A program made the translations under genes and the position numbers. A DNA stretch of 64,000 nucleotides, taken from the IMG/VR virus record IMGVR_UViG_3300028735_000003, positions 62,001 through 126,000 of that record; one strand, written 5' to 3'. The notes under the pieces were generated by a model. That model saw nothing but the letters and a program-made list of their open reading frames with translations. It was not told where the DNA came from and did no database searches. Positions 6,184 through 23,280 of this stretch are shown in pieces (position 1 is the stretch's first letter; every line of letters begins with the position of its first letter).

Positions 6184-6708
6184 CTAACTATTATCATAAA
6201 CATCTTCATTGTCTCGATATTCAACAGCGAACAGATCACAAGGATCTCCTTCGCCTGATTCTAGGCTACAACCAATTGAATTCAAGTCAATTGCAGCCTG
6301 TTCGTACCACAATTCATCTTGGTACGCCTCTTTTGAACCAATCCCTCCACAAACAGTACAAGACCTTTCGTATCTGTTTTTAGCAGAAGTACGAATCTTG
6401 GCATGACGAATAGAATACTCACGACCATTCTTGATAGACAAGCGCATAATTCGCTCAAAACGAGCCTTATTGCGCTTTCTGATCCTGGCCGATTTGTGAC
6501 CAGGAACCGTGCCAGTACCCCTACAACATGGACAATAATCAAGATTAGATGAAGCCAATGGCATGTAGTATTTACCGCTAGGCGTCAAAGCGAATACAGT
6601 TCCTAGAAAGGTCGAACGCTTCTGAACATTACCTTCATTCTGCCAATCTTCAGAATCCAAGTCTTTACGAATGTTTTCGAGTTCTTCTTGACTGAAGACA
6701 GTTTCCAT
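6184..6708 (-). CDS. protein with two CxxCxGxG zinc-binding motifs
   Basis: CPCCRGTGTV and CTVCGGIGS; start set at METVFS after GGGAG RBS. Confidence 0.65.
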   Translation of the reverse strand: METVFSQEELENIRKDLDSEDWQNEGNVQKRSTFLGTVFALTPSGKYYMPLASSNLDYCPCCRGTGTVPGHKSARIRKRNKARFERIMRLSIKNGREYSIRHAKIRTSAKNRYERSCTVCGGIGSKEAYQDELWYEQAAIDLNSIGCSLESGEGDPCDLFAVEYRDNEDVYDNS

Positions 6709-6736
6709 AATTAACTCCCGTTTAGTTTTGATACCA

Positions 6737-7261
6737 TTAATCTTCAATCGGGTCCTTAATGCCACATTTCCAACAATATGACTCGCCTTCAGATACCTTA
6801 GCGCCGCAAACCCTACATGGTACATAAATCTTCTTATAAATTGTAGATTGTTGTGTTGTTTGTTGCATAATTGCAGATTTATCAACAGTTGGTGCAATAA
6901 CTCCCATCAAAGAAACGTTTATTGCAACTGTGTTTTTCCTAGATAGATTCAACCAAATCGTATCATACTCTGCAAGAGCATTAAGATACCCTTTAACCGT
7001 CCTCTTGTCAATGTTTGACTTGATAGTCAAATAGTTATTATGCATAACATGAGTGGGATTATGCATTGATTCTTTGTGCATCACATTAAGAATTGTGAGT
7101 GAAGCAGCTTTCAATGCGTCATGCTCCTCTTGATATAGAAAAACATTGCATATTGCACTTTGCAAGTGGTTCTCTTGCAATACCCAAACCATCATGTAAG
7201 TCGTCCCTTCGTCTTTAAACTCATTCGAATTGTGTCTGTGTACCAGTACACATACACACAA
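6737..7261 (-). CDS. hypothetical protein with C-terminal double zinc ribbon (start uncertain)
   Basis: C-terminal CRVCG...CWKCG. Confidence 0.55.
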   Translation of the reverse strand: MCVCVLVHRHNSNEFKDEGTTYMMVWVLQENHLQSAICNVFLYQEEHDALKAASLTILNVMHKESMHNPTHVMHNNYLTIKSNIDKRTVKGYLNALAEYDTIWLNLSRKNTVAINVSLMGVIAPTVDKSAIMQQTTQQSTIYKKIYVPCRVCGAKVSEGESYCWKCGIKDPIED

Positions 7262-7428
7262 ACTCTATTAACTCTATTATATATCTGTAGATCTGTACAA
7301 TACAGTCAAATTACAACAGTAGCTTTTTCAGTCTCAATGAACTAGATAAGAATCTGAAGCGAAGTAAATCCATATCAATTTATTACATTCATAATCATTA
7401 CTTTAATATGTCACAAAAACATGTGACA

Positions 7429-7791
7429 TCATTCATGGCGTCCCCAACTGTCAATCATGTAGTCTTTTGCGCGCCTCTCATATTCTTGAACCTTCGCGCG
7501 GATGGAAGCTAGTTGCTTCTCTCCATCAGCAACCAATTCAGGATGAGTTACCTTCCATTCATCTATCTTTTCCTGAAGGTAAACTTCTGCTCTCTTAAGA
7601 AAAGTCACAAATGAATCGGCTGTCTGAACCGCAAATACAGACGCAGATATGGCAGAGTCTTCAACACCATTTGCCATATTCACTGCACATTGACCACACG
7701 CAGTTTCAGGAATCTTTGGACATTGCTGCTTTGTTGTACAACCGAATGCAGTAAATGTAATCAAAAACAAACAAGCTGACTTCATATACAT
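7429..7791 (-). CDS. putative lipoprotein
   Basis: MYMKSACLFLITFTAFGC lipobox-like signal; AAGGAG RBS. Confidence 0.6.
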   Translation of the reverse strand: MYMKSACLFLITFTAFGCTTKQQCPKIPETACGQCAVNMANGVEDSAISASVFAVQTADSFVTFLKRAEVYLQEKIDEWKVTHPELVADGEKQLASIRAKVQEYERRAKDYMIDSWGRHE

Positions 7792-7843
7792 GATCGACTC
7801 CTTGAATGGAAACTCCGTACAAATACAATCTTTGAATATAAGT

Positions 7844-8122
7844 CTAATATTGCTGCTTGTATCTCTTACGATAAATACGGACAATCTTTGACCTTAATAC
7901 ATCCTGTTTTGTAACAAGAATTTCCTCGCAGGATGATGGATGCCGGGTAATGTACCCTTTAAACCATCTAACATCCTCTGGTTCCATATAAACTGTACGA
8001 AGATCAACTAGAGAAGTAAACTCTACTTGACCATGATTGTTTCTAAACCATAGTTCTTTACCATCAACTACCAGCTTGATTCCATATACTATGGATTTTG
8101 AAAGTAATTTTCTAGCTTTCAT
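7844..8122 (-). CDS. hypothetical protein
   Basis: 92 aa ORF directly downstream of a tRNA-like element. Confidence 0.55.
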   Translation of the reverse strand: MKARKLLSKSIVYGIKLVVDGKELWFRNNHGQVEFTSLVDLRTVYMEPEDVRWFKGYITRHPSSCEEILVTKQDVLRSKIVRIYRKRYKQQY

Positions 8123-8134
8123 TTTTTTTTACCA

Positions 8135-8202
8135 GGTGCTTCATGACAGAATCGAACTGCCTTCTGCTGAATCCGCCGATTTATCCAATAATCTAATGAA
8201 AC
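8135..8202 (-). ncRNA. tRNA-like element with collapsed anticodon arm
   Basis: Acceptor GTTTCAT/ATGAAGC+ACC, T arm GGCAG-TTCGATT-CTGTC, D arm GAT...ATC; only 16 nt between D and T arms (about 23 expected). Confidence 0.65.
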
Positions 8203-8395
8203 AATAATTAGACATACATATAACTATGTATCATGTTGTCATCCATCATTATCATGCGTATATGAGTGATCAATATAATACCACCAACACAATATCACGA
8301 GAAACATATCAATTTGTATTTTTTTGGTAAAATATATTCAAATGTATTCCTGGCTTATTATTTGGAAGAAGCTCATGAGAAAACCAGGGAAATCA

Positions 8396-8626
8396 TTAGC
8401 TTCTGGTTACGCTTGATATTTTTCTTACAAGCATAGCTTCATAGAGAAACTCTCCTTCATTTCTTATGAAATTTCCACGACTATCAAAACATCTTTTTAC
8501 TTCTTTCTCAAACCATCTAGGAAACTTCTCTTCCTTACATAGTTGAGAAAGCCATTCGTTAGCTTTGAATTCACCATACTCTTGGTATACGTATCTATAT
8601 TTAATTAGAATGTCCAATATGTTCAT
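8396..8626 (-). CDS. hypothetical protein
   Basis: 76 aa ORF. Confidence 0.55.
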   Translation of the reverse strand: MNILDILIKYRYVYQEYGEFKANEWLSQLCKEEKFPRWFEKEVKRCFDSRGNFIRNEGEFLYEAMLVRKISSVTRS

Positions 8627-8635
8627 GGTAATCCA

Positions 8636-8830
8636 TTATTTTGTGCGCCAAAAACATTTTCCGAATTGGATAATGCTTCCTTTGTACGTTTCTTTGCACT
8701 TGTCACGAATTGCCTTAAATGAAGTTCCAACCCATAGCTTCACAGATACATTAGACCCTGGTCCTTCAATCGTTACAAAACAGCAACACTCTCGACTAGG
8801 AGAATAAATAGGTGTGCCATACTTGGACAT
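8636..8830 (-). CDS. hypothetical protein
   Basis: 64 aa; a partial degraded copy of its 3' half lies at about 9815-9880. Confidence 0.5.
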   Translation of the reverse strand: MSKYGTPIYSPSRECCCFVTIEGPGSNVSVKLWVGTSFKAIRDKCKETYKGSIIQFGKCFWRTK

Positions 8831-8898
8831 TGTTCGATTCCTTTTATAATTAGCAATGTACTCATACTAATTGCTGTATCTTATTACATTGCTAAATA

Positions 8899-9372
8899 TC
8901 ACTTCAAAGGTCTCCCACAGTGTAGACTCCAACAATGAGTTGCGTCTACATCGTTCATCTTACCACAATGTGGACATGGAATTTCTTTTTTATCAGAAAC
9001 TTGATCCGGCTTCCCAATTCCATTGTCCAGTCTATGATAGACTCTTCGTTTATATATGTATATACAAATCCAATTATAATGATTGAATCTTGCATCACTT
9101 CCTATGCTATCGAATTTATCAATAGCATCATAATAACTGCCACTATCTAATAACTTTTTGACCTCGACGTAAATTTTATGTTCCTCCACATTTGAAGGAT
9201 TACCAAAGTCATTCTGAATGAACCAATAACTGATTTCATCAATAGCTATGAATATGGCTGATTCTTTTGTATCACAGACAAAAAAACGATTGTTTTTATC
9301 GTCCTTAGTTACAATTTCCATAATATACACATTATCAATATCAATTGGTGAAATGCTCATCATTTCCTCCAA
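8899..9372 (-). CDS. hypothetical protein with C-terminal zinc ribbon, paralog 1
   Basis: Ends CPHCGKMNDVDATHCWSLHCGRPLK, identical tail to 9916..10380. Confidence 0.7.
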   Translation of the reverse strand: MEEMMSISPIDIDNVYIMEIVTKDDKNNRFFVCDTKESAIFIAIDEISYWFIQNDFGNPSNVEEHKIYVEVKKLLDSGSYYDAIDKFDSIGSDARFNHYNWICIYIYKRRVYHRLDNGIGKPDQVSDKKEIPCPHCGKMNDVDATHCWSLHCGRPLK

Positions 9373-9505
9373 CTTTATCTGTTTAGGATAACGCAGTATC
9401 CTAAAACTACGAATACTGATAATGTTATTTCACAAATTACATTGATATCAATTCCAGTCATCATATGACATTTTGATTTCAATATCCACAGACACTTATG
9501 CCATT

Positions 9506-9745
9506 TCAACGTGCAGACTTACTATTCCGAACCTTAAAAAGGTCCAACTTATTCTGAAGCTTTTGGGTCTGCTTCTCCAATCGCTTCTTTTGATTAGCCA
9601 ATTGTTGTTGGCGTACAATCTGTTGCCGCAAAAGTCTACGTAGCAACTTCAATTTCCGAATCTCTTGCTTAATTGGTTCAAAATTATTATCACACATAGA
9701 GTCACCAGTAGTAGTTACATCGACCATATAATTAGACGCCTTCAT
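9506..9745 (-). CDS. basic coiled-coil hypothetical protein
   Basis: 79 aa, Q/K/R/L-rich helix. Confidence 0.55.
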   Translation of the reverse strand: MKASNYMVDVTTTGDSMCDNNFEPIKQEIRKLKLLRRLLRQQIVRQQQLANQKKRLEKQTQKLQNKLDLFKVRNSKSAR

Positions 9746-9915
9746 TGTCTTCTCCCTTGATCTGCTATCTTGAACTTTGTTTATAAGACAATCCTAACGA
9801 TTATTCTCTTATTTTGTACGCCAGAAACATCTTCCGAATTGAATAATATTTTACTTTGTACGTTTCTTTGCACTTATTCTACAATTAGAAATGTATCCGC
9901 ACTAATTGATGAATG

Positions 9916-10380
9916 TTAATACTTTAAGGGTCTCCCACAATGTAGACTCCAACAATGAGTCGCGTCTACATCGTTCATTTTACCACAATGTGGGCATGGA
10001 ATTTCTTTTTTGCCAGAAATTTGTTCTGGCTTCCCAATTCCATTATTCACATGCTTATGAAAAACTTTCTTTCTATAGATAGATATAAAAATCAAACTCT
10101 CATTCAAATTGAGAGTACCATTGTCTTCTATATTATCGAATTCATCAATAGCACAGTAATAATTTCCATTGTCCACCAGTTCTTTGATCCTGGTGTAAAT
10201 TTCATGTTCCTTCACATTCGAAGGATCATCAAAATCATTATTTTTGAACCAATTGTTCATTTCATCAATAGCAGCGAATATTGCAGACTCTTCTGTATCA
10301 TGAATAAAGTGATTGCTATCATCACCGCACTCATCTACAACCTCCAGAACATACACATGATCAATTGTGTAGGTATCCAT
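9916..10380 (-). CDS. hypothetical protein with C-terminal zinc ribbon, paralog 2
   Basis: Start set at MDTYTIDHV after GGAG; aligns along its length with 8899..9372. Confidence 0.7.
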   Translation of the reverse strand: MDTYTIDHVYVLEVVDECGDDSNHFIHDTEESAIFAAIDEMNNWFKNNDFDDPSNVKEHEIYTRIKELVDNGNYYCAIDEFDNIEDNGTLNLNESLIFISIYRKKVFHKHVNNGIGKPEQISGKKEIPCPHCGKMNDVDATHCWSLHCGRPLKY

Positions 10381-10397
10381 TTTTTTCTCCAACTTTA

Positions 10398-10476
10398 GGT
10401 GCTTCGTAGCAGAGTCGAACTGCTTTCTACGGATTGAAAAGTAAATCCGCCGATAGATACAATAGTCTAACGACAC
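10398..10476 (-). ncRNA. tRNA-like element with 12-nt anticodon loop
   Basis: T arm AGCAG-TTCGACT-CTGCT, 3' ACGAAGCACC, stem GCGGA/TCCGT enclosing TTTACTTTTCAA; paralogous to 8135..8202. Confidence 0.6.
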
Positions 10477-10579
10477 AATAATACATATAGCTATATTATT
10501 ACAAGCGCAGCTTCATATGAATTACCATTTATCTATAAGATAACCCCAACGATTATTCCGAAAATTATGTTCCTTTACT

Positions 10580-11509
10580 TTAGTAAATAGTAGGATCTTC
10601 TGTTCCACATTTCCAGCAAGGTGTTTCACCGGCATTCAAACCTGTCCCACAACACTTGCACGGATGGTCATTCTTGTTCTCGACTACAAAAGTTTCTTGG
10701 TGAAAATAGTTGTTTTCACACTCTTCACAATCGTCACAATCACAATCGTCACCATCACAATAGTCACAATCACAATCGTCACCATCACAATCATTACAAG
10801 AAGAATTCAGCATGTCTGACTGACTCTCATGAACATATACAGACCATTTCGTATGAAACTGCCCAGATTCATCTAGATTGAAAAGGTACCTGTTGATACC
10901 TTTTTCCTCCAACTCTCTGGCAATATCTTCTGGTGAGTCTGTCTGACCAAAATGTAACCCGGTTGTATATGAATTCTTATTCACTCTAATATACCCATAG
11001 TCAGACGGATCAAGATCTTTGATAGGATTTGCCTTCTGCGAATTCCCCTCAAATTCCTCAAAATAAGAGGAGGCGTCTTCTTTTATACATTCAACACACG
11101 ACAAATCACAGTCGATGTCTGAAAAATGATATGAAGGTGTCCAACCATATGAATCAGGTTGAATTCGAATGAGCTTTGAACAGTGATCACAAACTGACCA
11201 CTCATCATCCCACTCGCACTCAATACCCATTTTTTCAAATAGCTTGCCAACTCTATTTGGCAAGTCACTTACAAGCTTTCGCGTATGCGTATTGTAATCA
11301 TAACTGGTGATTGTATTCCAATCACCAGTCGCTACTATTCCGCATGCTGGAGTGTCATATCCAGGTTCAGCATAACCATGATGGTGTAGCCGAATCCCTT
11401 CAATTCTATTCTCAACAGAAATAGAAATAGATTTCGCCATATTCTTGGCGATATTCAGAATACGTTCTGCTCGAAGAGCAATGTTCTTGTTTCGTTCGTC
11501 AGAGTTCAT
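10580..11509 (-). CDS. hypothetical protein with Asp/Cys-rich repeat and C-terminal zinc ribbon
   Basis: 309 aa; CNDCDGDDCDCDYCDGDDCDCDDCEEC; ends CKCCG...CWKCG. Confidence 0.75.
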   Translation of the reverse strand: MNSDERNKNIALRAERILNIAKNMAKSISISVENRIEGIRLHHHGYAEPGYDTPACGIVATGDWNTITSYDYNTHTRKLVSDLPNRVGKLFEKMGIECEWDDEWSVCDHCSKLIRIQPDSYGWTPSYHFSDIDCDLSCVECIKEDASSYFEEFEGNSQKANPIKDLDPSDYGYIRVNKNSYTTGLHFGQTDSPEDIARELEEKGINRYLFNLDESGQFHTKWSVYVHESQSDMLNSSCNDCDGDDCDCDYCDGDDCDCDDCEECENNYFHQETFVVENKNDHPCKCCGTGLNAGETPCWKCGTEDPTIY

Positions 11510-11517
11510 GTTTTCGC

Positions 11518-11898
11518 CTACTCTTTTGTGTGCCCATCAAACCAAGGACCATACAATCTGGTCCTTCTCTTTCCTGCCGCTTTTGTGCAGGTACTTGAAG
11601 AGGTTTCCGGATCACTGCAATGCTCTTTCGCCTCTTCAAGAGTAAGTCCACGCTTTATTGTGATATTCCTGCAACTTTTGAAAAAAACTCGGAAAACTTT
11701 GTATGTTTCCATTGTGTACCCATCAAACCAAGGACCATACAATCTGGTCCTTCTCTTTCCTGCCGCTTTTGTGCAGGTACTTGAAGAGGTTTCCGGATCA
11801 CTGCAATGCTCTTTCGCCTCTTCAAGAGTAAGTCCACGCTTTATTGTGATATTCCTTCTACTCTCGAAAAAAAATCTAACGACTTTGTATGTTTCCAT
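11518..11898 (-). CDS. hypothetical protein made of two fused copies of a 62-aa unit
   Basis: 186-bp direct repeat (offset 11533 vs 11719). Confidence 0.7.
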   Translation of the reverse strand: METYKVVRFFFESRRNITIKRGLTLEEAKEHCSDPETSSSTCTKAAGKRRTRLYGPWFDGYTMETYKVFRVFFKSCRNITIKRGLTLEEAKEHCSDPETSSSTCTKAAGKRRTRLYGPWFDGHTKE

Positions 11899-11911
11899 GT
11901 TTTACCTGCTT

Positions 11912-12355
11912 TTATGGGTGGCAGAAACTATTTGTAGACTTGTTCTTTCGAACATATCGCCGCCAAAAATTATTGATCTTTCGGTCCAAATCAGATTTGT
12001 CCCGAAACTCATATCTACCATTTTCGTCCCAAAATTCAACAAAATCATCTACACTTGGGTGCAACCAAGAATGACAAGATGTCTTGCGATTCTCCTTATT
12101 ACATTTCAATAACTCCATACGAGTCACACCACTAGGTGATTCAGAGTCGAAAAACTTACCATACTGGTATGCAAACGCATGTGTATCATTGGAGTACAAT
12201 GAAACATCCTTATATAGGATGTACGCAATATACGCCCAACGATAACAATCCCCTTTGTTTATCTCTGATTCCATACCAACCATCTCTGGGAAAAATTCAC
12301 GAGTAATCAACTTCCCATCGATTTTACCTGGAAGTTTACCTGGAAGTTTACGCAT
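11912..12355 (-). CDS. hypothetical protein
   Basis: 147 aa; AGGAG RBS. Confidence 0.65.
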   Translation of the reverse strand: MRKLPGKLPGKIDGKLITREFFPEMVGMESEINKGDCYRWAYIAYILYKDVSLYSNDTHAFAYQYGKFFDSESPSGVTRMELLKCNKENRKTSCHSWLHPSVDDFVEFWDENGRYEFRDKSDLDRKINNFWRRYVRKNKSTNSFCHP

Positions 12356-12385
12356 GAATGTTCTCCTAGTTTTATGGTTTTGCTA

Positions 12386-12619
12386 TCAATATGGTTGATA
12401 ACAATTCTTCCATTCTTCAGAAGAATTGTACCAACAATACCACGTTCTATTACCACTTGGAGAAATTGTCTCGGCATACCAATTATGTTTATATACCAGT
12501 TGCAGCATTAGTCCAGATCCACTTGGAAGTGAATCCATACCATGCTGCTTTAGCATCCACTTTAGCCGTAAATGCACATGTGCAATGTGCATAAATAATT
12601 CGATCTGAGAAGAATCCAT
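12386..12619 (-). CDS. hypothetical protein
   Basis: 77 aa; AAGG upstream. Confidence 0.5.
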   Translation of the reverse strand: MDSSQIELFMHIAHVHLRLKWMLKQHGMDSLPSGSGLMLQLVYKHNWYAETISPSGNRTWYCWYNSSEEWKNCYQPY

Positions 12620-12622
12620 ACC

Positions 12623-12844
12623 TTATGTTGCCTTCTCAAATTTAGAGAAATATTCAATAATTCCTGTGCGAATCGCATTCACAGTTGCCGCATTCCACCT
12701 GTAGCTTCTTGCATCATATTCCAGATTTGCATACGCAACTATCAAATTTTGATTCACACCAACCGTAAACAGGAAGTTTCGGACAGCTACTGCCTTCACT
12801 CCCCTTCTCGACGCCAATTGCTCAATTCTCTCTGTTGTCAACAT
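12623..12844 (-). CDS. hypothetical protein
   Basis: 73 aa MLTTERIEQLASRRGVK. Confidence 0.6.
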   Translation of the reverse strand: MLTTERIEQLASRRGVKAVAVRNFLFTVGVNQNLIVAYANLEYDARSYRWNAATVNAIRTGIIEYFSKFEKAT

Positions 12845-12880
12845 TATTATACCTATAAAAGCATAAAAAAGAGAGAATAC

Positions 12881-13282
12881 CTATTCATATCTTGGTCGAA
12901 GCGTTGGACGCGCTGGATGATCTTCCAGGCAGACGATTATATCCATGCCTCCCAAAACTGAATAAATGTTCCCATTACGCCTGTGCCCATACAAATCTTC
13001 TAGATATCTACGAAACCAATCAACCTTTTCAGGATTGATGGGTTGCAACTCATAATCCCACTTGTCCGGACCGGCAACCGAAATTGCCTTTACCGGAATT
13101 GAGGCAACAGGGTTACGGTGGTTGTACCACCAACCACCTTCTTCCGGTCCGCCATAATGCCGGGTAATCTCATATGCATTCACATACATAAGAGATTCTG
13201 CACCGGGTTTTACATACCCTTCAGGCGGATAATCATCATCATATTGATGATCATAATCACAATCACAATCATAATCGCACAT
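12881..13282 (-). CDS. hypothetical protein
   Basis: 133 aa, YGGPEEGGWWY motif; GGAG RBS. Confidence 0.7.
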   Translation of the reverse strand: MCDYDCDCDYDHQYDDDYPPEGYVKPGAESLMYVNAYEITRHYGGPEEGGWWYNHRNPVASIPVKAISVAGPDKWDYELQPINPEKVDWFRRYLEDLYGHRRNGNIYSVLGGMDIIVCLEDHPARPTLRPRYE

Positions 13283-13301
13283 TATCGTTTCTCCATATCA
13301 G

Positions 13302-13352
13302 TGCGGTTCAAAAGTCTACACCTGTTTTACTCCACCGTTCCTGGAAACCAAA
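13302..13352. repeat. 51-bp exact repeat, copy 1 (copy 2 at 14497-14547)
   Basis: TGCGGTTCAAAAGTCTACACCTGTTTTACTCCACCGTTCCTGGAAACCAAA identical at both sites, non-coding. Confidence 0.9.
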
Positions 13353-13436
13353 CAAAACAAACATGTATAGACCCGTGAGGCGAACCCCAAAATGGCGGGA
13401 ACCCAATCCAATAGTCCCCCTTTGCATTAGACGTGG

Positions 13437-13602
13437 ATACCATAATCCAAACAAAGTTTGGACTGGTCTAGTCCCATACACACAATCTCTTATGTGTATG
13501 GGGACTGGTTTTACAAGAAAACAACATGATTCCAATACTAAACCAGCAAATATACCGGAATCTAAGTCTATGACAATGTTCAGAATGGTCCTGCCCATAC
13601 TG
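13437..13602. repeat. about 165-bp near-identical structured repeat, copy 1 (copy 2 at 13871-14036)
   Basis: Direct comparison, about 2 differences in the non-coding part; contains several hairpins. Confidence 0.9.
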
Positions 13603-13768
13603 AAACATTGTCTCTTACAACAACAAGAATCTCATCCATGTCCTCAACATGGATATTTTTTCCGCGCATGTATTCAAGGACATCCTCTTTCTTCTGGAGA
13701 CAAAGACTGTCAGGAGCCTTGCATGAAACCGTAATATCGCCGTCAAACGATACACAGATAAGTACCAT
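13580..13768 (-). CDS. 62-aa hypothetical protein, paralog 1 of 3
   Basis: MVLICVSFDGDITVSCKAPDSL...DEILVVVRDNVSVWAGPF; AAGGAG RBS. Confidence 0.65.
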   Translation of the reverse strand: MVLICVSFDGDITVSCKAPDSLCLQKKEDVLEYMRGKNIHVEDMDEILVVVRDNVSVWAGPF

Positions 13769-14013
13769 GATCGTTCTCCTTCCACGCTGAAAACTAGACA
13801 TATATGTATAGACCAGTGGGGAGACCCCCAAAATGGCGGAGACTAAATCTAGTATCACTTTTATACATAAATACCATAATCCAAACAAAGTTTGGACGGG
13901 TCTAGTCCCATACACACAATCTCTTATGTGTATGGGGACTGGTTTTACAAGAAAACAACATGATTCCAATACTAAACCAGCAAATATACCGGAATCTAAG
14001 TCTATAACAATGT

Positions 14014-14205
14014 TCAGAATGGTCTTGTCCATACTGTCACATTGTCATCCACAATAACAAGGATTTCATCAAGGTCATCCGTACTTACGCCTCTTTCTGC
14101 ACAGAGGAATTGAATTACATCCTCCTTTTTCTGGAAACGGAGGCTATACGGAGCCTTACACGAAAAGGTAGCATTATGGTCAAAAGACACACCGACGATA
14201 ACCAT
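14014..14205 (-). CDS. 63-aa hypothetical protein, paralog 2 of 3
   Basis: ...SCKAPYSL...DEILVIVDDNVTVWTRPF; AGGAG RBS. Confidence 0.65.
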   Translation of the reverse strand: MVIVGVSFDHNATFSCKAPYSLRFQKKEDVIQFLCAERGVSTDDLDEILVIVDDNVTVWTRPF

Positions 14206-14231
14206 GACAACTCTCCTATTGTTTGTAAAGT

Positions 14232-14426
14232 TCAGAATGGTCCTGACAATACTGTAATATTGTCGTTGACAATGACCAGAATCTCATCCGTGTCTTCCAG
14301 TGTAACATTATTTGTACGCAAATACTCAAGGATAGCCTCTTTCTTCTGAAGATCCTGAAGACAAAGACTGTCCGTAGCTTTGCATGAAACTGTGGCATCG
14401 CCATCAAGCTCATAAATGAGAACCAT
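14232..14426 (-). CDS. 64-aa hypothetical protein, paralog 3 of 3
   Basis: ...SCKATDSL...DEILVIVNDNITVLSGPF; AGGAG RBS. Confidence 0.65.
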   Translation of the reverse strand: MVLIYELDGDATVSCKATDSLCLQDLQKKEAILEYLRTNNVTLEDTDEILVIVNDNITVLSGPF

Positions 14427-14682
14427 AATATCTCTCCTAGTTGGAATATAAACAAATGTTTGGAAACAGGTTCGACCGCCTATATGAGCTTTTCATTGCG
14501 GTTCAAAAGTCTACACCTGTTTTACTCCACCGTTCCTGGAAACCAAATATATTGTCTTTCAAATTGGAAGGAACACGGTCAGGCTCGATATCGATTCGAC
14601 CGTTTCCCACGTATATTATACGTGTGCATTCTCCCAAGATCACGCATGCAAAATCTTGGGAATAAGCCTATCACATTCCTAG

Positions 14683-14745
14683 TGGGACCAGCCGGATTCG
14701 AACCGACATTTATTCCTTTACCCTAATCATTAGGGCAATGGTCCC
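14683..14745 (-). ncRNA. tRNA-like element lacking an anticodon arm
   Basis: Perfect acceptor GGGACCA/TGGTCCC+A, D-like arm GCCC...GGGT, T arm GTCGG-TTCGAAT-CCGGC; only 12 unpaired nt (AAAGGAATAAAT) between D and T arms. Confidence 0.7.
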
Positions 14746-14824
14746 AAAAGTACATGAACCTATAAGCTTCGGAAGAAAGGGGAATGAAACGGTTCTTATT
14801 CCATTCCCACACACCTACTATGTA

Positions 14825-15205
14825 CTACTTATCTTCCCGCTGGTCGGACCAGCGGGACACTCCGCCACCCTTTCCCTTTCCAATATGGAAAAGGGCGCCG
14901 GATTCACGGGCTCCGGCACGGTCCCGAACATAATTCTGAACTTTTTCAGAAAGAATTCGGAAGTTTTCCGGCTGAACGTTCAGCCTTTGGAGCGAATAGT
15001 TCACCAGGGCAGGCATATTGATCCTAGCCCCAGGGAACTGATCGAAGACAGCATTGACCGCGGCTCCAACCGCTTCATTTTCAGTTTCCATTTCAGCTTG
15101 AAAAGCCAAAAGGTCCTTGGCAAACTTCGCACAAGTAGCATCGAGGTCGATGCTGCCGTTCCCAGCACGCACAACGTAAGTATTGAGGTTGATCGCAGTA
15201 TTCAT
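14825..15205 (-). CDS. hypothetical protein
   Basis: Start set at MNTAINLNTY after GAAGGAG; GC-rich codon usage; GKGKGGGV motif. Confidence 0.75.
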   Translation of the reverse strand: MNTAINLNTYVVRAGNGSIDLDATCAKFAKDLLAFQAEMETENEAVGAAVNAVFDQFPGARINMPALVNYSLQRLNVQPENFRILSEKVQNYVRDRAGARESGALFHIGKGKGGGVSRWSDQREDK

Positions 15206-15430
15206 GACGAACTCCTTCTCTACGATGAATCTGGCGCTTGCCATGCTGAATCTTGACTCAATTCAAGATTCATTGACTCGCGCCTTCCTAGCACTTCCGC
15301 CCGAACGCCGTTACATGATGGGAACGTCAACCCGTTCCCGTTGCCTTGCCTTGCCTTGCGTTCGTCGCACCTTGGCGTTGTCTATGTTTCATGATGGGAT
15401 CGTTATGCGCCGCATATAATAAGGTTTCGT

Positions 15431-15746
15431 AGCAAAAACTATGCCAACTATACTTCGGCACGATTCTTGCTACGCACGAACACATGACCAATTTGGCATA
15501 TACTTTGCTTCTTTGCAATATACATGCCGTTTTGTATGGCACGATGTTTGCACTTTGCAAACGTTATGCCACCATATATCGTGACACTACATTGCCATAT
15601 ATTGTCATATATTGCCAACAAATATGGCACGAAGTTTGCACCTTTGCAAATGTTATGCCATCAATCGTGAAACTACATTGCTATATATTGTCATATAGTG
15701 TCACGCAAACATGGCACGACGTTTGCACTTTGCAAACGCTATGCCA
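15431..15746. promoter_or_regulatory. sigma54 -24/-12 cluster 1 (10 sites, both strands; includes an 87-88 bp tandem repeat)
   Basis: GG-N10-GC 16-mers at 15431(-), 15456(+), 15494(+), 15514(-), 15537(+), 15556(-), 15625(+), 15645(-), 15712(+), 15731(-), e.g. TGGCACGATGTTTGCA. Confidence 0.85.
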
Positions 15747-16206
15747 CATGATAATTCACCTCTTGTGAAAAGAGGTGCTGGTAAGTGCGGGCGAATAAAA
15801 ATCCGCCATAGTTTATCGTGAACTAGATAACGAAAAACTCTTACTGAGAGAAAGAGGTTCAATCCTCTTCTTCACCCCAGTCCTCGTTTTTCCAGTTTTT
15901 CATAGAATCCTTATGAGCTTTACTCATGCGTCGGGGCTTTTGTGCTTCGCCCCTTGCGACTGAAAGCGCAAAAAGATTGCGCCGACGTTTACGCGGTAAT
16001 TCGATTCTAAAAGACCGATCGCCTTTATGAGTAGCCATTTATCTACTCCTTTTCAAACAAGATTGGGACGCTAAAGCGCCCCAACACTACACCTTACTTC
16101 AAGGAAGTGACGGTTACCAGAACGAACCACAAACTCACTCAAATCGATCTTTCTCATGGGCTTACCCTTTCCTTCAAATCCTGTTTCATGATGGGCTGAT
16201 GTACAA

Positions 16207-16791
16207 TCAGCCCCGCGAGAACGCCACCTTGGATTGACGCACCTTCACGCCGAATCCAAGGTTGCCGTTAGACGGATGGCTCACTTTATGCACAGCCATC
16301 CGCGGCTTCTCAAAAAGACGAGAAAACGATTCATCGCGGCGAATAATATCCGTCGCGTGTTCGGGGTTAGCACACCTGTTCGAATGTACTTCCCCGAAAT
16401 AATCGGGGGGAGACTCAAACAGTCGGCGGTCAATCCAATCAATCGCCCTTTGATAAAGGGCAAACTCCTTTTCCAAAGCTTTACCCTGTTCATCACGGGC
16501 AACCTCCCCCGTGCCACGACGAATCGTGGCAACAAAGGGATATTCCACCTTTCTCGGCTTGTTCATGCCCGTATGGGCACTAGCCAAGATATGATCAAGA
16601 ACGACCCTTTTCAATTCAGTCAAAGCTGGCGTGGGAAGCAACTCCCCACTTTCCAGCTTCTTTACAATTGAAGCCGTCGCGTAAGACACTTCCGAATCCG
16701 AAGCGAGAAGGTACTCACGATGCGCTTGAAAAAAAGCAAGCGCACTAACCTTTGGAGAATTGGCTTTGTGCAGAAGCCTACGCGGTGTCAT
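16207..16791 (-). CDS. hypothetical protein
   Basis: 194 aa, GGAAGGGAG RBS, junction motif upstream. Confidence 0.7.
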   Translation of the reverse strand: MTPRRLLHKANSPKVSALAFFQAHREYLLASDSEVSYATASIVKKLESGELLPTPALTELKRVVLDHILASAHTGMNKPRKVEYPFVATIRRGTGEVARDEQGKALEKEFALYQRAIDWIDRRLFESPPDYFGEVHSNRCANPEHATDIIRRDESFSRLFEKPRMAVHKVSHPSNGNLGFGVKVRQSKVAFSRG

Positions 16792-16843
16792 GGCTAACTC
16801 CCTTCCTTTCCCTCTATCCCACTTCCGTGTTTAATGATGGGAA

Positions 16844-17026
16844 CTACTTGCTCCCACCAAAGAGCAGTCCGACGATCATGACCAGTGCACTAGCGCCGAC
16901 CGACCATCGGACAGATACTCCTTCAAAGTACTGTGCCATGATGGGAAACTGTGGGATCAGGAAAAAATTGATGGCACAAAAAATGCATGCGGACAAAATC
17001 GCCCAAAGTACCAACAGCTTCCACAT
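16844..17026 (-). CDS. small two-helix membrane protein
   Basis: MWKLLVLWAIL...; GGAGG RBS; two hydrophobic segments. Confidence 0.65.
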   Translation of the reverse strand: MWKLLVLWAILSACIFCAINFFLIPQFPIMAQYFEGVSVRWSVGASALVMIVGLLFGGSK

Positions 17027-17196
17027 ATCCGCCTCCAACTGTTTTATGATGGGTAGAACGTTCTACCCTTATTGCAACAGCACATTGACGTTCACACCTT
17101 ACTAGGTGTTTCCTAACGCCCGTCAAGTTGCGTTGCACCACCCACAATGTATTGTTTCATGATGGGATCGTTGCAATACATATAAAAGATATAACT

Positions 17197-17437
17197 TGGC
17201 ATGCTTATTGCAGACGGTTCTAACGTAGCACGCGAATTGCTACGTTGCAAAGCTCATGCCATCATATTCACGTGCAAGTATCGTACCATATACAAGTTAT
17301 GCAAGTATCATACCATATGCAAATATCATGCCAAATAATTATTCATTAGTTTCATTGATATGATAAACTTGGATATAATGAACTTTTCGTGAAAAACTTG
17401 GCTGGTATATCGTTTGCACCTTGCAAATTCAATGCCA
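17197..17437. promoter_or_regulatory. sigma54 -24/-12 cluster 2 (7 sites plus 1 variant)
   Basis: 17197(+), 17246(-), 17273(-), 17300(-), 17318(-), 17403(+), 17422(-); AG-N10-GC variant at 17226(+). Confidence 0.85.
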
Positions 17438-17505
17438 ACCTGAACAAAGAAACACAAAACTCCCGCTCATCAATTAGATGGCGAGATCAATTAGTAACGG
17501 GTTAG

Positions 17506-17841
17506 TTACACGTTGCGCTTACTCAACCAAGCAGCGCAACTGCCTTCACGGATGAGACGAACAATCTCATCCGTCAGAGGTGACCCGACTTCGGTATGAT
17601 ATCCTTGCATGGCAAGGATATCAACCTCCCGAGACGTAATCTCGGGAGAATACGTATTCCTTTCGAATTCGCGCAAGGCTTCACGCGCCTTGCGCGCGTT
17701 TTCCCGCGTTCCAATAAGCGCGGACTCAGCCCTTTCAAGGGCTTTCCTCGCCCGAGCTACGGCTTCTCGGGCGAACGCCTCATCCTCGGCTGCCTGCACG
17801 CAGGCAGCCTTGAGCCCTTCTAGAGTAGGTCTTATATTCAT
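17506..17841 (-). CDS. coiled-coil hypothetical protein
   Basis: Start set at MNIRPTL; Ala/Arg/Glu-rich helix. Confidence 0.65.
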   Translation of the reverse strand: MNIRPTLEGLKAACVQAAEDEAFAREAVARARKALERAESALIGTRENARKAREALREFERNTYSPEITSREVDILAMQGYHTEVGSPLTDEIVRLIREGSCAAWLSKRNV

Positions 17842-17922
17842 TTTATGCCTTCTTCGGTGTTGTGTTAGCGGCACCTTGACGCCAACTATGTTTCATGATG
17901 GGACGCGAACACCTGTTTTTCA

Positions 17923-18021
17923 TGGCACACACTTTGCTACTTTGCAAACAATATGCCTACCAAAACACAATGCAAGCAATTGACTTGACAATTGCTTGCA
18001 CTTACTAGCACGCTTCTTGCT
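17923..18021. promoter_or_regulatory. sigma54 cluster 3 (2 sites plus 1 variant) and a 12-bp inverted repeat
   Basis: 17923(+) TGGCACACACTTTGCT, 17943(-) AGGCATATTGTTTGCA, variant 18006(+); TGCAAGCAATTG-N6-CAATTGCTTGCA at 17971-18000. Confidence 0.75.
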
Positions 18022-18830
18022 TATCCTCCGCCCCCGCACGCTTCGTAGCGCGCTTCAAGCTCCGACCAGTTGTCGAAGTCAAGAATTCTTCTAATCTCGC
18101 GAGCCCTTGCATGCTCAAGGGCAGCTTTCATGGCGAAAACTCGCCATTCAGTTTCGGCGACGGTAGCATCATCTACCGTGCCTTCGGCGCGCAATTCACG
18201 CGCCAATTCCCGCTTGACACGCGCATCGATGACGAATTCATCGCGCGCATGTTCCGCGGTTACAAGCGCCGATACAAGTGACCGACGCATCTTGCTGGCG
18301 CGGCTTCCCACGCCAGCCGATCCAAAGACAACTGCCCTACCATGCCGGTTGGCATGGTCATCGGGCACAACATTAGGGTGACGAATCTCGAACATAATGA
18401 TCCGGCAGACGTCAAGCAAGGTACCTGTCGCCATATCTGGCATGAGGTATGCCACGCGATGGTCCTTAGTTTGACGAAGCCAAGCAATAAAGCCGTTACA
18501 ATAAGCGCGCAATTCCGTTGAAGTAGGATTCCGCCGTTGCGGCATCCCCTTTTCGTCACAATAAGCAATCTTTCCGTTGATGGCGGAATGGAATTCATCC
18601 GGTGACAACGGAATTGCGGAAGGGAATTCAGCATTAGCTGAATTCCAACCAGACTTAGACTTACGTGTCCCTTTACAATCAGAACACGACTTAGACTTCA
18701 CGGAACGCGGCTTAGTTGTAGTCGCGTCCGCGGACGAATCTGGAACCATTGCGGAGATAGAATTCTCCGCAATGTAGGTCGAAGCCAATCCTGCGAGAAA
18801 ACTATCAACAATAGACCTAGACATGGCCAA
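18021..18830 (-). CDS. hypothetical protein
   Basis: 269 aa, AAGGGAG RBS, GC-rich codons. Confidence 0.7.
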   Translation of the reverse strand: MAMSRSIVDSFLAGLASTYIAENSISAMVPDSSADATTTKPRSVKSKSCSDCKGTRKSKSGWNSANAEFPSAIPLSPDEFHSAINGKIAYCDEKGMPQRRNPTSTELRAYCNGFIAWLRQTKDHRVAYLMPDMATGTLLDVCRIIMFEIRHPNVVPDDHANRHGRAVVFGSAGVGSRASKMRRSLVSALVTAEHARDEFVIDARVKRELARELRAEGTVDDATVAETEWRVFAMKAALEHARAREIRRILDFDNWSELEARYEACGGGG

Positions 18831-18930
18831 CTCCCTTCTTTCGGGGGTATTCCCTCACTGTTGCGCCACAATTGTTTCATGATGGGTTTACATTATAGGT
18901 AGGTTGAATCCAACAATAATGAAACGAAGA

Positions 18931-19064
18931 CGGTATAGCAGTTGCTATTAGCAAAAACCATACCTGTTCTAAAACTGAATTGGTACTAATCATGCTATAG
19001 CAAAAATAATGCCACCTCTCAAAGAGACTCGGCACAACAATTGCTCCTTACAATATTCATGCCA
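18931..19064. promoter_or_regulatory. sigma54 cluster 4 (5 sites plus 1 variant)
   Basis: 18931(+), 18950(-), 18981(+), 18999(-), 19030(+); GG-N10-GT variant at 19049(-). Confidence 0.8.
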
Positions 19065-22968: not shown

Positions 22969-23280
22969 TTATAACATAGTTAGGTACAGTTTTAATTTTT
23001 GTTGTATATTATGTGGATTTATATTTAGGATACCATTTATAGTAATAGCATTAGTCGAAGCCGTTGATATTTCTTCCCTATATTTTACTGACCATATTTC
23101 AGTTTTATTTATGTCATAATGGAAGCAAACCAAGTGTTTAAATGGTATAATAGTGGTCCAGATTTGAAATATTCTACCGTTATGATTGTAAAACACATTA
23201 CATTTATCGCATAATATCATTAAATACAATTGATGATTTATGTTAGATTCTAAGATTGAATTACAGTATGGGCAAATCAT
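22969..23280 (-). CDS. CPxC zinc-finger family protein (type X)
   Basis: MICPYCN...LCDKC...QQKLKLYLTML. Confidence 0.7.
   Translation of the reverse strand: MICPYCNSILESNINHQLYLMILCDKCNVFYNHNGRIFQIWTTIIPFKHLVCFHYDINKTEIWSVKYREEISTASTNAITINGILNINPHNIQQKLKLYLTML

What the first reader, a model, noticed from the sequence alone, without database searches (positions are those of the whole stretch)
14683..14745. 63-nt mini-tRNA with perfect acceptor and T arms but no anticodon arm
Seen: 7/7 Watson-Crick acceptor, canonical TTCGAAT T loop, strong D-like hairpin GCCCTAA-TGA-TTAGGGT, joined by an unstructured 12-nt linker. It is unrelated in sequence to the 8135/10398 pair, so anticodon-arm loss occurred at least twice. 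Established: the tRNA elbow (D/T) and acceptor are what RNase P, CCA-adding enzyme and EF-Tu recognise, as in tmRNA and Y-RNA tRNA-like domains. Inference: a functional elbow mimic.
Basis: partly seen in the sequence, partly recalled or inferred. Interest (0 to 1): 0.62.

Follow-up and report, generated by a model that had tools for sequence, protein, structure and literature searches.

The report
Conserved anticodon-less tRNA-like element, huge phage
A 63-base remnant of a tRNA gene that lost its anticodon arm but kept its acceptor and T arms sits between two genes of an uncultivated 354-kb phage; it evolves far more slowly than its neighbours, so it is probably still used, most likely as a cutting signal for the host's tRNA-processing enzymes.

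Summary
On the minus strand, 14745->14683, lies a 63-nt tRNA-like sequence. It scores 33.8 bits on Rfam tRNA (threshold 29) and ARAGORN rejects it. It has a 7-bp Watson-Crick acceptor stem, a GUCGG/UUCGAAU/CCGGC T arm, a 7-bp hairpin in the D-arm position, and a 12-nt linker where the anticodon arm should be.

The window is part of a 353,765-bp IMG/VR huge-phage contig.

The same anticodon-less element occurs in four other metagenomes. It differs at 0-5 of 63 positions, while third codon positions of the adjacent gene differ by 22-45%. Both stem changes keep pairing. No relative carries an intact tRNA at this site, so it is neither a one-off deletion nor a freely decaying pseudogene.

More distant phages carry other tRNA-like elements with broken anticodon regions after the same gene. 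The window's 8137/10400 pair is independently derived from tRNA-Val.

The "elbow mimic" reading is only partly supported. The single G of the D-like loop is not conserved; what is conserved is the acceptor/T-arm minihelix.

Best explanation (about 0.4): a cis-acting RNase P / RNase Z processing signal, like plant-mitochondrial t-elements or mascRNA. No expression data exist.

The parts
14683..14745 (-). 63-nt anticodon-less tRNA-like element. Acceptor 5' strand 14745-14739; U8 U9 at 14738-14737; D-position hairpin 14736-14720; 12-nt linker 14719-14708; T arm 14707-14691; acceptor 3' strand 14690-14684; discriminator A at 14683.
   Evidence: Rfam tRNA 33.8 bits. Fold z = -4.56. Identical or nearly identical copies at L003:4482-4544, L004:2583-2645, L015:996-1058 and in run X2.
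14780..14808 (-). Hairpin GGGAAUGGAAU-AAGAACC-GUUUCAUUCCC followed by CUUUCUUCC. It starts 17 nt after the stop codon of the upstream gene and ends 34 nt before the element. It could be a weak terminator or a 3'-end protecting hairpin.
   Evidence: Terminator-like scan and fold. L015 has a hairpin of different sequence, GGGUAUGG..CCAUACCC, 8 nt before the element and with no U tract.
14825..15244 (-). Upstream gene of 139 aa (the source record aa). It is a real family of about 125-145 aa with no Pfam match. The predicted C-terminal half is winged-helix-like.
   Evidence: 50 homologues. No Pfam hit. AlphaFold model pLDDT 83. Only weak winged-helix matches: Foldseek E about 0.4; atlas TM by query 0.37-0.47.
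14565..14682 (-). Conserved structured trailer. It contains hairpin CCCAAGAU..AUCUUGGG (14660-14633), palindrome CACGUAUAAUAUACGUG (14624-14608) and stem-loop GGAAACGGUC..GACCGUGUUCC (14607-14570).
   Evidence: 97-98% identical to L003 and L004. Shared with L005 and L008, which lack the tRNA-like element. 4 of 26 predicted pairs show changes on both sides.
14493..14547 (-). 55-nt repeat (second copy at 13298-13352, 98% identical). It lies upstream of the next genes and is a candidate promoter or 5'-leader module.
   Evidence: the repeat finder family D6.
14232..14426 (-). First downstream gene (64 aa). It is one of three tandem paralogues in repeats of about 434 nt.
15536..15747 (.). Three copies of a 37-nt palindromic repeat spaced 87-88 nt apart, upstream of the 139-aa gene. 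Operator- or iteron-like.
   Evidence: the repeat finder family D4.

Best explanation
The element is a tRNA gene that lost about 11-12 nt, roughly positions 27-38: the 5' strand of the anticodon stem plus the loop. What remains is the acceptor stem, a D-position hairpin, a 12-nt linker (the old 3' stem strand 'GGA' plus the variable loop 'AUAAAU') and the T arm. It can no longer decode.

A small clade of huge phages has kept it under purifying selection. It still presents the acceptor/T-arm minihelix that RNase P, RNase Z and the CCA-adding enzyme recognise.

The most likely mode of action is cis-acting RNA processing:
1. It is transcribed on the minus strand with the upstream winged-helix-like gene, through the hairpin at 14808-14780.
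2. RNase P cuts at G14745 and RNase Z or an exonuclease cuts after A14683.
3. The upstream mRNA is left with a hairpin-protected 3' end, the structured downstream leader is freed, and a 63-nt RNA (66 nt with CCA) is released as a by-product.

Shown: the structure, its conservation, the stem-preserving substitutions, the absence of an intact tRNA in relatives, and same-strand intergenic placement. Inferred: transcription, cleavage, CCA addition, and the benefit to the phage.
For: 1. Structure and significance.
2. Purifying selection. The element differs at 1, 0 and 5 of 63 positions from L003, L004 and L015. Third-codon divergence of the adjacent gene is 0.22, 0.26 and 0.45, giving binomial P of 3e-6, 6e-9 and 2e-10. 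Run X2 shows a single change, at linker position 14708, while the gene carries dozens.
3. The two stem substitutions in L015 keep pairing: G-U to A-U in the hairpin and U-G to C-G in the T stem. The other three changes fall in the triloop and the linker.
4. No intact tRNA at this site in any of roughly 20 distinct related loci.
5. Same-position elements in more distant phages keep an acceptor-like stem and a T arm but have no anticodon stem. L012:8529-8620 has T stem GUAGG/CCUAC, a C-G to A-U change on both sides at 51-63, and linker AAUGGAAACAAU matching 9 of 12 positions. L010:8496-8568 has GGUCGGG/CUCGACC with GCAGG/CCUGC. L106 carries three elements.
6. Context fits processing. All elements lie on the coding strand between same-strand genes. 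A hairpin sits 3-34 nt upstream in five of the six same-position elements checked; L012's upstream hairpin lies further off. U is at -1 in the window, L015, the three L106 elements and the 8137/10400 pair. The 3' trailer starts with CUA, as after genuine tRNA-Lys and tRNA-Leu genes of related phages. The 8137/10400 elements end 13 and 20 nt before start codons.
7. [quoted passage not shown]
Against: - There are no RNA data: no RNA run holds the sequence.
- The nearest sister lineages, L005 and L008, keep the gene, the hairpin and the downstream structured block but lack the element. It is therefore dispensable for expressing the neighbours.
- The upstream hairpin has a weak U tract in the window and might terminate transcription before the element.
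- The whole 250-nt non-coding block is conserved, so part of the conservation could reflect something other than the tRNA-like fold, or a recent recombination sweep.
- Only four distinct sequences exist, and there are no changes on both sides of a pair within the clade.
- The deeper 'homologues' were found with a scan that required an intact acceptor and T arm. That is an ascertainment bias, and their homology is inferred from position and short similarities (R1 scores: 20 bits for L012, only 7 bits for L010).
Confidence: 0.4

Rival explanations
1. A trans-acting stable small RNA. After RNase P/Z processing and CCA addition, the 63-66-nt minihelix accumulates and works as a decoy, sponge or cofactor for tRNA-binding proteins. 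Candidates are host toxins or defence enzymes that act on tRNA acceptor ends, tRNA-modifying or processing enzymes, or a phage protein.
For: - The purifying selection and structure evidence is the same as for the main explanation.
- The element is dispensable for neighbour expression in the sister lineages, which suits an accessory trans-acting gene.
- In the window a TATAGG motif lies 20 nt upstream, leaving room for an own promoter (reading only).
- The side hairpin and the linker are conserved too, more than a bare RNase P signal would need.
- Phages are known to counter tRNA-directed defences with their own tRNAs (PMC12445682).
Against: - No partner protein was identified.
- The neighbouring 139-aa protein looks like a DNA-binding winged helix rather than an RNA binder, and even that match is weak.
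- L015 leaves only 8 nt between the upstream hairpin and the element, so there is no room for an own promoter.
- The known phage counter-measures use decoding-competent tRNAs.
- No expression data.
Confidence: 0.2
2. A non-functional relic: a tRNA pseudogene that lost its anticodon arm and is conserved only because it is embedded in a conserved, perhaps recently exchanged, non-coding module.
For: - Huge phages carry many tRNA genes with fast turnover. Related phages have genuine tRNAs nearby (L008 tRNA-Lys, L009 tRNA-Leu).
- The window holds two further damaged tRNA-Val copies.
- The element has a patchy distribution on the protein tree.
- The flanking trailer is equally conserved.
- There are no compensatory changes on both sides of a pair within the clade.
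Against: - Divergence is 0.08 in the element against 0.45 at third codon positions for L015 (P about 2e-10).
- Both stem substitutions preserve pairing.
- The element is more conserved than its own leader, which is replaced in L015.
- A sweep would have to have occurred separately in samples from different habitats.
Confidence: 0.2
3. A DNA-level element. The palindromes (CCCTAAT-N-ATTAGGG; GGGACCA..TGGTCCC) would serve as protein-binding sites, a recombination or attachment site derived from a tRNA gene, or part of an origin.
For: - The D-position hairpin is a perfect 7-bp inverted repeat whose centre base varies while the half-sites stay constant.
- The neighbour is a possible winged-helix DNA binder, and palindromic repeats lie nearby.
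- tRNA genes are common integration sites (established knowledge).
- The element looks like an insertion or deletion relative to L005 and L008.
Against: - Wobble to Watson-Crick changes (G-U to A-U, U-G to C-G) make sense for RNA pairing. At the DNA level they create or remove mismatches in a cruciform.
- No integrase or direct repeats flank the element.
- The nearby 37-nt repeats are unrelated in sequence to it.
- The canonical T-loop sequence is kept exactly.
Confidence: 0.08
4. One reading: a mimic of the tRNA elbow (D-loop/T-loop corner), recognised as such by elbow-reading factors.
For: - The T loop is canonical and invariant.
- U8 is present.
- RNase P and other enzymes do read the elbow (established knowledge).
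Against: - There is no G18-G19.
- The D-position loop closes to three bases in the predicted fold, and its only G changes to C in L015.
- In L012 the D position is occupied by a long, unrelated hairpin.
Confidence: 0.07

Closest known systems
t-elements of plant mitochondria (tRNA-like structures at mRNA ends, proposed substrates of RNase P and RNase Z; Forner et al. 2007 as cited in PMC4368725)
   Same: tRNA-derived acceptor/T-arm structures that do not decode. They lie in untranslated regions between genes on the coding strand and are proposed to define mRNA 5' and 3' ends.
   Different: They belong to an organelle, not a phage, and share no sequence homology. For t-elements mapped transcript ends exist; here nothing is mapped.
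mascRNA / menRNA (tRNA-like small RNAs at the 3' ends of MALAT1 and MEN-beta; PMC8457004)
   Same: A tRNA-like element of about 60 nt lies just downstream of a 3'-end protecting structure. RNase P cleavage makes the upstream RNA's 3' end. RNase Z and the CCA-adding enzyme finish the small RNA. The 3' trailer is conserved.
   Different: These are vertebrate nuclear lncRNAs. The protecting structure is a triple helix rather than a hairpin. There is no homology, and processing of the phage element is untested.
Canonical tRNA (Rfam RF00005), in particular phage-encoded tRNAs
   Same: The acceptor stem, U8, T arm and discriminator A are present. The 3' trailer begins CUA, as after tRNA-Lys and tRNA-Leu genes of related phages. 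The acceptor plus T-loop pattern is otherwise found in full-length tRNAs: 65 of 88 genome and viral matches are tRNA-CAU, and one IMG/VR phage tRNA-Arg shares the T arm.
   Different: There is no anticodon stem-loop, no G18-G19, and the length is 63 nt. ARAGORN rejects it.
tRNA-like domain of tmRNA
   Same: An acceptor stem plus T arm with a reduced D region and no anticodon arm.
   Different: The element has no G3-U70 alanine identity pair (it has G3-C70), no mRNA-like domain or tag reading frame, and ARAGORN finds no tmRNA. tmRNA is several hundred nt long, not 63.
Bacterial Y-RNA-like YrlA with Ro60/Rsr (some jumbo phages encode a TROVE protein; PMC7824862)
   Same: A non-decoding tRNA mimic with a T arm and a D-like arm.
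   Different: In YrlA the RNA ends form the Ro-binding helix and the 'acceptor' is closed (from memory). Here the ends form the acceptor stem. There is no Ro-binding helix, no Rfam hit other than tRNA, and no TROVE match among the window proteins scanned.
Phage T4 RNA C and RNA D (small stable RNAs of unknown role from the tRNA gene region; PMC3014915)
   Same: Phage-encoded small non-decoding RNAs associated with tRNA genes, with unknown function.
   Different: They are longer (from memory, about 120-140 nt).

Membership tests
Canonical tRNA (RF00005) | 7-bp acceptor stem with a discriminator base | tested here: met
   GGGACCA/UGGUCCC plus A73.
Canonical tRNA (RF00005) | T arm of 5 bp with a 7-nt T-psi-C loop | tested here: met
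   GUCGG UUCGAAU CCGGC.
Canonical tRNA (RF00005) | Anticodon stem-loop (5 bp plus a 7-nt loop with an anticodon) | tested here: not met
   The Rfam alignment has 5 nt where the model has 15. ARAGORN finds no tRNA. The 12-nt linker is unpaired.
Canonical tRNA (RF00005) | D loop with G18-G19 for the elbow contact | tested here: not met
   The loop is UAAUGAUUA, or a 3-nt loop in the fold. Its single G is C in L015.
tRNA-like processing signal (t-element / mascRNA type) | A non-decoding acceptor/T-arm structure in an untranslated region, on the coding strand | tested here: met
   It lies between the same-strand genes 15244-14825 and 14426-14232.
tRNA-like processing signal (t-element / mascRNA type) | Cleavage by RNase P and RNase Z that defines transcript ends in vivo | not testable with these tools
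   No RNA run holds the sequence, and Logan contigs cannot show RNA ends.
tRNA-like processing signal (t-element / mascRNA type) | A 3'-end protecting structure just upstream of the cleavage site | tested here: met
   Hairpin at 14808-14780. There are hairpins of different sequence in L015 (8 nt upstream), L010 and L106. Significance is mixed: z from -4.3 to +0.2.
tmRNA | G3-U70 pair and an internal tag-encoding reading frame | tested here: not met
   The pair is G3-C70, the element is 63 nt, and ARAGORN finds no tmRNA.
Y RNA / YrlA | A Ro-binding helix formed by the RNA ends, with a Ro60/TROVE gene nearby | tested here: not met
   The ends form the acceptor stem. Only tRNA is matched in Rfam at E up to 1. 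No TROVE match among the 28 window proteins scanned; this test was incomplete.
Neutral tRNA pseudogene | Evolves at the neutral rate, with stem-breaking substitutions tolerated | tested here: not met
   0-5 of 63 differences against 22-45% third-codon divergence. Both stem changes keep pairing.
tRNA-derived attachment site of an integrative element | A partial tRNA copy flanked by an integrase and by a direct repeat of the tRNA 3' part | tested here: not met
   No integrase-like ORF or matching direct repeat within 12.5-16.2 kb. Both acceptor strands are present.

The most novel reading that the evidence does not exclude
Huge phages maintain a class of anticodon-less tRNA mimics. Examples are this 63-mer, the tRNA-Val-derived pair in the same genome, and the elements in L010, L012 and L106. 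These would be cut out by RNase P and RNase Z, CCA-tailed, and would act in trans. Possible roles are decoys or sponges for host tRNA-directed immunity or toxins that read the acceptor end or T arm, or titrators of host tRNA-processing and modification enzymes during takeover.
Probability: 0.1. Interest if true: 0.8.

Novelty: new variant of a known kind. Interest (0 to 1): 0.47.

Why it matters
Phage tRNA genes are usually discussed as codon-usage helpers or as replacements for host tRNAs destroyed by defence nucleases. A tRNA remnant that cannot decode yet evolves 6-15 times more slowly than neighbouring synonymous sites points to a second use of the tRNA shape in phages. That use could be transcript punctuation, as in organelles, or a protein-binding small RNA.

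It also shows that tRNA finders miss such elements. ARAGORN finds none in this window, and default Rfam filters missed the 8137 copy. Surveys of phage 'tRNA' content may therefore overlook a class of conserved tRNA-like RNAs.

Tried and rejected
- **Plant-organelle origin.** This was my first guess, from the weak antisense hit to Plastid-ycf2. I rejected it: the hit is simply the antisense of a tRNA-like sequence, and the window is an IMG/VR phage contig.
- **More copies by DNA pattern.** IMG/VR searches with four patterns and one metagenome-contig scan found only the source contig. The scan with the linker plus T-arm pattern returned chance coding matches and ordinary or odd tRNAs.
- **An intact parent tRNA.** The acceptor plus T-loop pattern gave 88 full-length tRNAs in genomes and viral contigs. 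They were mostly tRNA-CAU of Patescibacteria, Bdellovibrionales and Chloroflexota, plus archaeal tRNA-Pro. None has the GCCC D stem, so the parent stays unknown. Resemblance to the L008 phage tRNA-Lys (variable loop AAAU, GGG..CA acceptor) is suggestive only.
- **A conserved micro-ORF.** AAGGA, then 4 nt, then AUG, 12 codons. Rejected: the AUG is ACG in L003 and X2, and in L012 the AUG is followed directly by a stop.
- **Leader-trailer pairing around the element.** Predicted in the window, but the leader is replaced in L015 while the trailer is kept, so it is not conserved.
- **The 139-aa neighbour as an RNA-binding partner** (its IGKGKGGG motif recalls a KH loop). The model shows only a weak winged-helix likeness. 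There is no Pfam, PHROG, PDB-sequence or GenBank-phage match, so no support.
- **Stop-codon recoding of the phage.** Suggested by a release-factor gene and an in-frame TAG in TnpB. Reading through TAG adds almost no ORF length.
- **Literature.** Searches for phage tRNA-like elements without anticodon arms found nothing specific.
- **Sequencing runs.** Read laying on three DNA runs gave contigs only. This was useful for variants but gave no expression data.

Full report
**1. What is there**

Read on the minus strand from 14745 to 14683 the sequence is GGGACCA UU GCCCUAA UGA UUAGGGU AAAGGAAUAAAU GUCGG UUCGAAU CCGGC UGGUCCC A.
- Rfam's tRNA model matches it end to end at 33.8 bits, against a gathering score of 29. 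It is the only gathering-level hit in the 64-kb window.
- The Rfam alignment has 5 nt where the model has 15 anticodon-arm positions.
- ARAGORN calls no tRNA anywhere in the window.
It is -28.2 kcal/mol, z = -4.56, and none of 200 shuffles does as well.
- A strict pattern scan for 'T arm directly followed by a 7-bp acceptor closure' finds two sites in the window against 0.17 expected.

**2. Where it is**

- The window is part of IMGVR_UViG_3300028735_000003 (also Ga0272446_1000003), 353,765 bp, from a microbial-mat metagenome.
- Window genes match phage families: thymidylate synthase, dNMP phosphatase and an M23-type peptidase. There is also a class-I release factor with PCRF and RF-1 domains, collagen-repeat proteins and an IS200/IS605 pair. 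This is a huge phage.
- The left 19 kb has higher G+C (36-55%) than the rest (27-31%), and all its genes are on the minus strand.
- The stretch 18880-14449 is colinear, at 80-90% identity, with independent metagenome contigs L003 and L004.

Reading the minus strand around the element:

| Feature | Coordinates |
|---|---|
| 139-aa gene | 15244-14825 |
| Hairpin with weak U tract | 14808-14780 |
| Spacer, 34 nt | 14779-14746 |
| The element | 14745-14683 |
| Conserved structured trailer, about 118 nt | 14682-14565 |
| 55-nt repeat, also found before another gene | 14547-14493 |
| Next gene | 14426-14232 |

The 139-aa gene is a real family with 50 homologues and no Pfam match. Its model is only weakly winged-helix-like.

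**3. Is it a one-off deletion or a kept element?**

The gene family let me fetch related loci.
- The element is present at the same place in L003 (one change, the last linker base U to C), in L004 (identical) and in L015 (five changes). It is also in a contig of a hot-spring run, X2, with the same single change as L003.
- That makes five independent samples, all without an anticodon arm.
- Third codon positions of the adjacent gene differ from the window by 0.22 (L003), 0.26 (L004) and 0.45 (L015). The element differs at 1, 0 and 5 of 63 positions. Binomial probabilities at the neighbour's rate are 3e-6, 6e-9 and 2e-10.
- Of the five L015 changes, two are in stems and both keep pairing: G-U to A-U in the side hairpin and U-G to C-G in the T stem. 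One is in the triloop and two are in the linker. All 57 pair cells across the three distinct sequences are standard pairs.
- There are no changes on both sides of a pair within this clade, so classical covariation is absent.
- The leader upstream of the element is replaced in L015. A different hairpin, GGGUAUGG..CCAUACCC, lies 8 nt upstream, while the 3' trailer is kept.

It does not apply: no related locus has an intact tRNA at this site.

**4. Distribution**

- On a tree of the 139-aa protein, the four element-bearing sequences form one clade with 100/99 support.
- The nearest sampled lineages, L005-L007 and L008, lack the element. They keep the post-gene hairpin and the structured trailer.
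- The element is therefore an insertion or deletion difference inside a conserved non-coding region, and neighbour expression does not need it.

Further away there are tRNA-like elements at the same place after the gene:
- L012-L014 (protein 50% identical). An outer 6-bp stem GGCGCU/GGCGCC encloses a long hairpin, the linker AAUGGAAACAAU (9 of 12 identical to the window's) and a T arm GUAGG UUCGAGU CCUAC, followed by CCA. R1 scores it 20 bits, E = 9e-5 locally.
- L010 and L011 (57% identical). This is a 72-nt element, GGUCGGG UA GCCC ... GCAGG UGUAAGU CCUGC CUCGACC. It has the length of a tRNA, but its 23-nt 'anticodon region' cannot form the stem.
- L106 (a 181-kb IMG/VR phage). It has three elements sharing the acceptor UCGYCUA/UAGRCGA and canonical T arms, with three different middles. 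One scores 48.5 bits on Rfam tRNA, but ARAGORN assigns it only a two-base 'anticodon' and no amino acid.

Between these groups the acceptor and T stems differ by paired changes, for example T-stem 51-63 C-G to A-U.

Two caveats apply. These elements were found with scans that demanded an intact acceptor and T arm. Their homology to the 63-mer rests on position and short similarities; R1 gives L010 only 7 bits. Loci L009, L105, L107-L109 and L124-L128 have nothing at the site.

**5. Origin**

- The linker reads A + AAGGA + AUAAAU.
- In ordinary phage tRNAs the same motif occurs as the 3' end of the anticodon stem plus the variable loop. An example is the L130 tRNA-Gln...ACGGA AAAAAU GUGGG UUCGA.
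- A normal tRNA has 23 nt between the D and T stems; this element has 12.
- The simplest history is loss of about 11-12 nt, covering the 5' strand of the anticodon stem and the loop.
- The parent tRNA cannot be named. The acceptor plus T-loop pattern occurs in 88 full-length tRNAs, 65 of them tRNA-CAU. One IMG/VR phage tRNA-Arg shares the T arm, and a related phage's tRNA-Lys shares the variable loop and part of the acceptor.

The 8137-8202 and 10400-10476 elements of the window are a separate case. Thirteen IMG/VR phage tRNA-Val(UAC) genes share their T arm and acceptor 3' strand. One copy has the loop expanded to 12 nt. In the other, 11 nt (GCGGAUUCAGC) stand where the 17-nt anticodon stem-loop should be.

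**6. How it most likely works**

What selection has kept is the acceptor/T-arm coaxial helix, the exact T loop, U8, the discriminator A, a U at -1 and a CUA start of the trailer. Genuine tRNA-Lys and tRNA-Leu genes in related phages have the same trailer start. These are features that bacterial RNase P, RNase Z and the CCA-adding enzyme use, and minihelices lacking D and anticodon arms are known substrates (established knowledge, from memory).

The element lies on the coding strand behind a hairpin. In L015 there is no room for a separate promoter. I therefore favour co-transcription with the upstream gene, followed by excision. RNase P cleavage at 14745 would leave the upstream mRNA to be trimmed back to its protecting hairpin, and the 3' cut would free the structured leader of the downstream genes. 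The model for this logic is twofold. t-elements have been proposed as RNase P substrates at plant mitochondrial mRNA ends (PMC4368725), and mascRNA sits behind the MALAT1 triple helix (PMC8457004). The tRNA-Val-derived pair ends 13 and 20 nt before start codons, which fits the same punctuation idea.

I give this 0.4. Every step after 'the structure is conserved' is inference.

Rivals:
- A trans-acting stable small RNA, as decoy or cofactor: 0.2. The side hairpin and linker are conserved beyond what a cleavage signal needs, and the element is dispensable in sister lineages.
- A relic riding in a conserved module: 0.2. The rate contrast and the stem-preserving changes argue against it.
- A DNA-level site: 0.08.
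It is weakened because the D-position loop lacks G18-G19, its only G is not conserved, and L012 has an unrelated long hairpin there.

**7. Comparison with known things and novelty**

- It is not a tRNA: there is no anticodon arm and no G18-G19.
- It is not tmRNA: the pair is G3-C70, there is no tag frame, and ARAGORN is negative.
- It is not Y RNA/YrlA: the RNA ends form the acceptor stem, there is no Ro-binding helix, and there is no Rfam hit.
- It does not behave as a neutral pseudogene.
- It works most like a t-element or mascRNA, but it is unrelated to them and sits in a phage.
- I found no description of anticodon-less tRNA-like elements in phages in the searchable literature. No GenBank phage matches the region or the neighbour gene.
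- T4 RNA C and D are phage small RNAs of unknown role from a tRNA region (PMC3014915) and may be the nearest phage precedent. I could not compare them.

I rate it a new variant of a known kind. Interest is moderate (0.47). It is real, conserved, easy to test, and possibly one example of a wider class. But only four distinct sequences exist, there are no expression data, and the element is optional in sister phages.

Noticed in passing
window 8137-8202 (-) and 10400-10476 (-): Two paralogous tRNA-like elements derived from tRNA-Val(UAC). Thirteen IMG/VR phage tRNA-Val genes share their T arm and acceptor 3' strand. The 8137 copy (66 nt) scores 35.8 bits on Rfam in a small search but is missed by the default filters; 11 nt (GCGGAUUCAGC) stand where its anticodon stem-loop should be. 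The 10400 copy (77 nt, 25.3 bits) keeps the stem but has a 12-nt loop. Both are followed by CCU and end 13 and 20 nt before a start codon.
   Followed up: partly
L106:19-91, 2177-2248, 2317-2394; L010:8496-8568; L012:8529-8620: Other huge-phage contigs carry tRNA-like elements with an intact acceptor and T arm but no working anticodon arm. L106 has three that share the acceptor UCGYCUA/UAGRCGA but have different middles. Several have a hairpin a few nt upstream and U at -1.
   Followed up: partly
window 14565-14682 (-); L005:6580-6705; L008:722-855: A conserved structured non-coding block lies downstream of the element. It is present also in relatives that lack the element. It includes the stem-loop GGAAACGGNC...GNCCGUG, with changes on both sides of some pairs (4 of 26 predicted pairs). 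No Rfam match. Function unknown.
   Followed up: partly
window 15536-15572, 15624-15660, 15711-15747: Three copies of a 37-nt palindromic repeat (ATGGCACGATGTTTGCACTTTGCAAACGTTATGCCAC) spaced 87-88 nt apart, upstream of the possible winged-helix gene. They look like operators or iterons. Copy number varies in run X3, where a joint skips 86 nt.
   Followed up: no
window 13294-14550: Tandem repeats of about 434 nt encode three 63-64-aa paralogues (…SCKA.DSLCLQ.KKE…DEILV.V.DN.…GPF). A 55-nt repeat (13298-13352 and 14493-14547) is 98% identical. Relatives L004, X2 and X3 differ in the number of units.
   Followed up: no
window about 3000-19000 versus 19000-64000: There is a sharp change at about 19.0-19.5 kb. 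G+C drops from 36-55% to 27-31% and GC skew flips sign. The left part is colinear with independent contigs of 45-48% G+C. This is either a horizontally acquired or early-gene module, or an assembly join. The junction could not be tested.
   Followed up: partly
window 894-2439 (+): An IS200/IS605 element. It has TnpA (Y1 transposase, 894-1310) and a TnpB whose frame 1276-2439 carries one in-frame TAG at 1732-1734. Reading through TAG adds almost no ORF length elsewhere, so this is probably a pseudogene rather than recoding.
   Followed up: partly
window 32134-33018 (-): A phage-encoded class-I peptide chain release factor with PCRF and RF-1 domains. Its relatives are in Prevotella (Lak-type) and other phage records.
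   Followed up: partly
window 25861-27669 (+): A 602-aa protein whose N-terminal part and extreme C-terminal end read like a papain-like peptidase. It is interrupted by an insert of about 330 aa with a weak LAGLIDADG match (E = 3.5e-4), so possibly an intein. The peptidase part was judged by eye only.
   Followed up: partly
window 11518-11898 (-): This ORF consists of two nearly identical 63-aa halves (METYKV.R.FF.S.RNITIKRGLTLEEAKEHCSDPETSSSTCTKAAGKRRTRLYGPWFDG), an internal tandem duplication.
   Followed up: no
window 22969-24335 (-): Three small paralogues of 103-122 aa begin MICP(Y/F)C... and have zinc-ribbon-like CxxC...CxxC motifs. Further zinc-ribbon C-termini (CPHCGKMNDVDATHCWSLHCGRPLK) occur in the ORFs at 8899-9372 and 9916-10476.
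   Followed up: no
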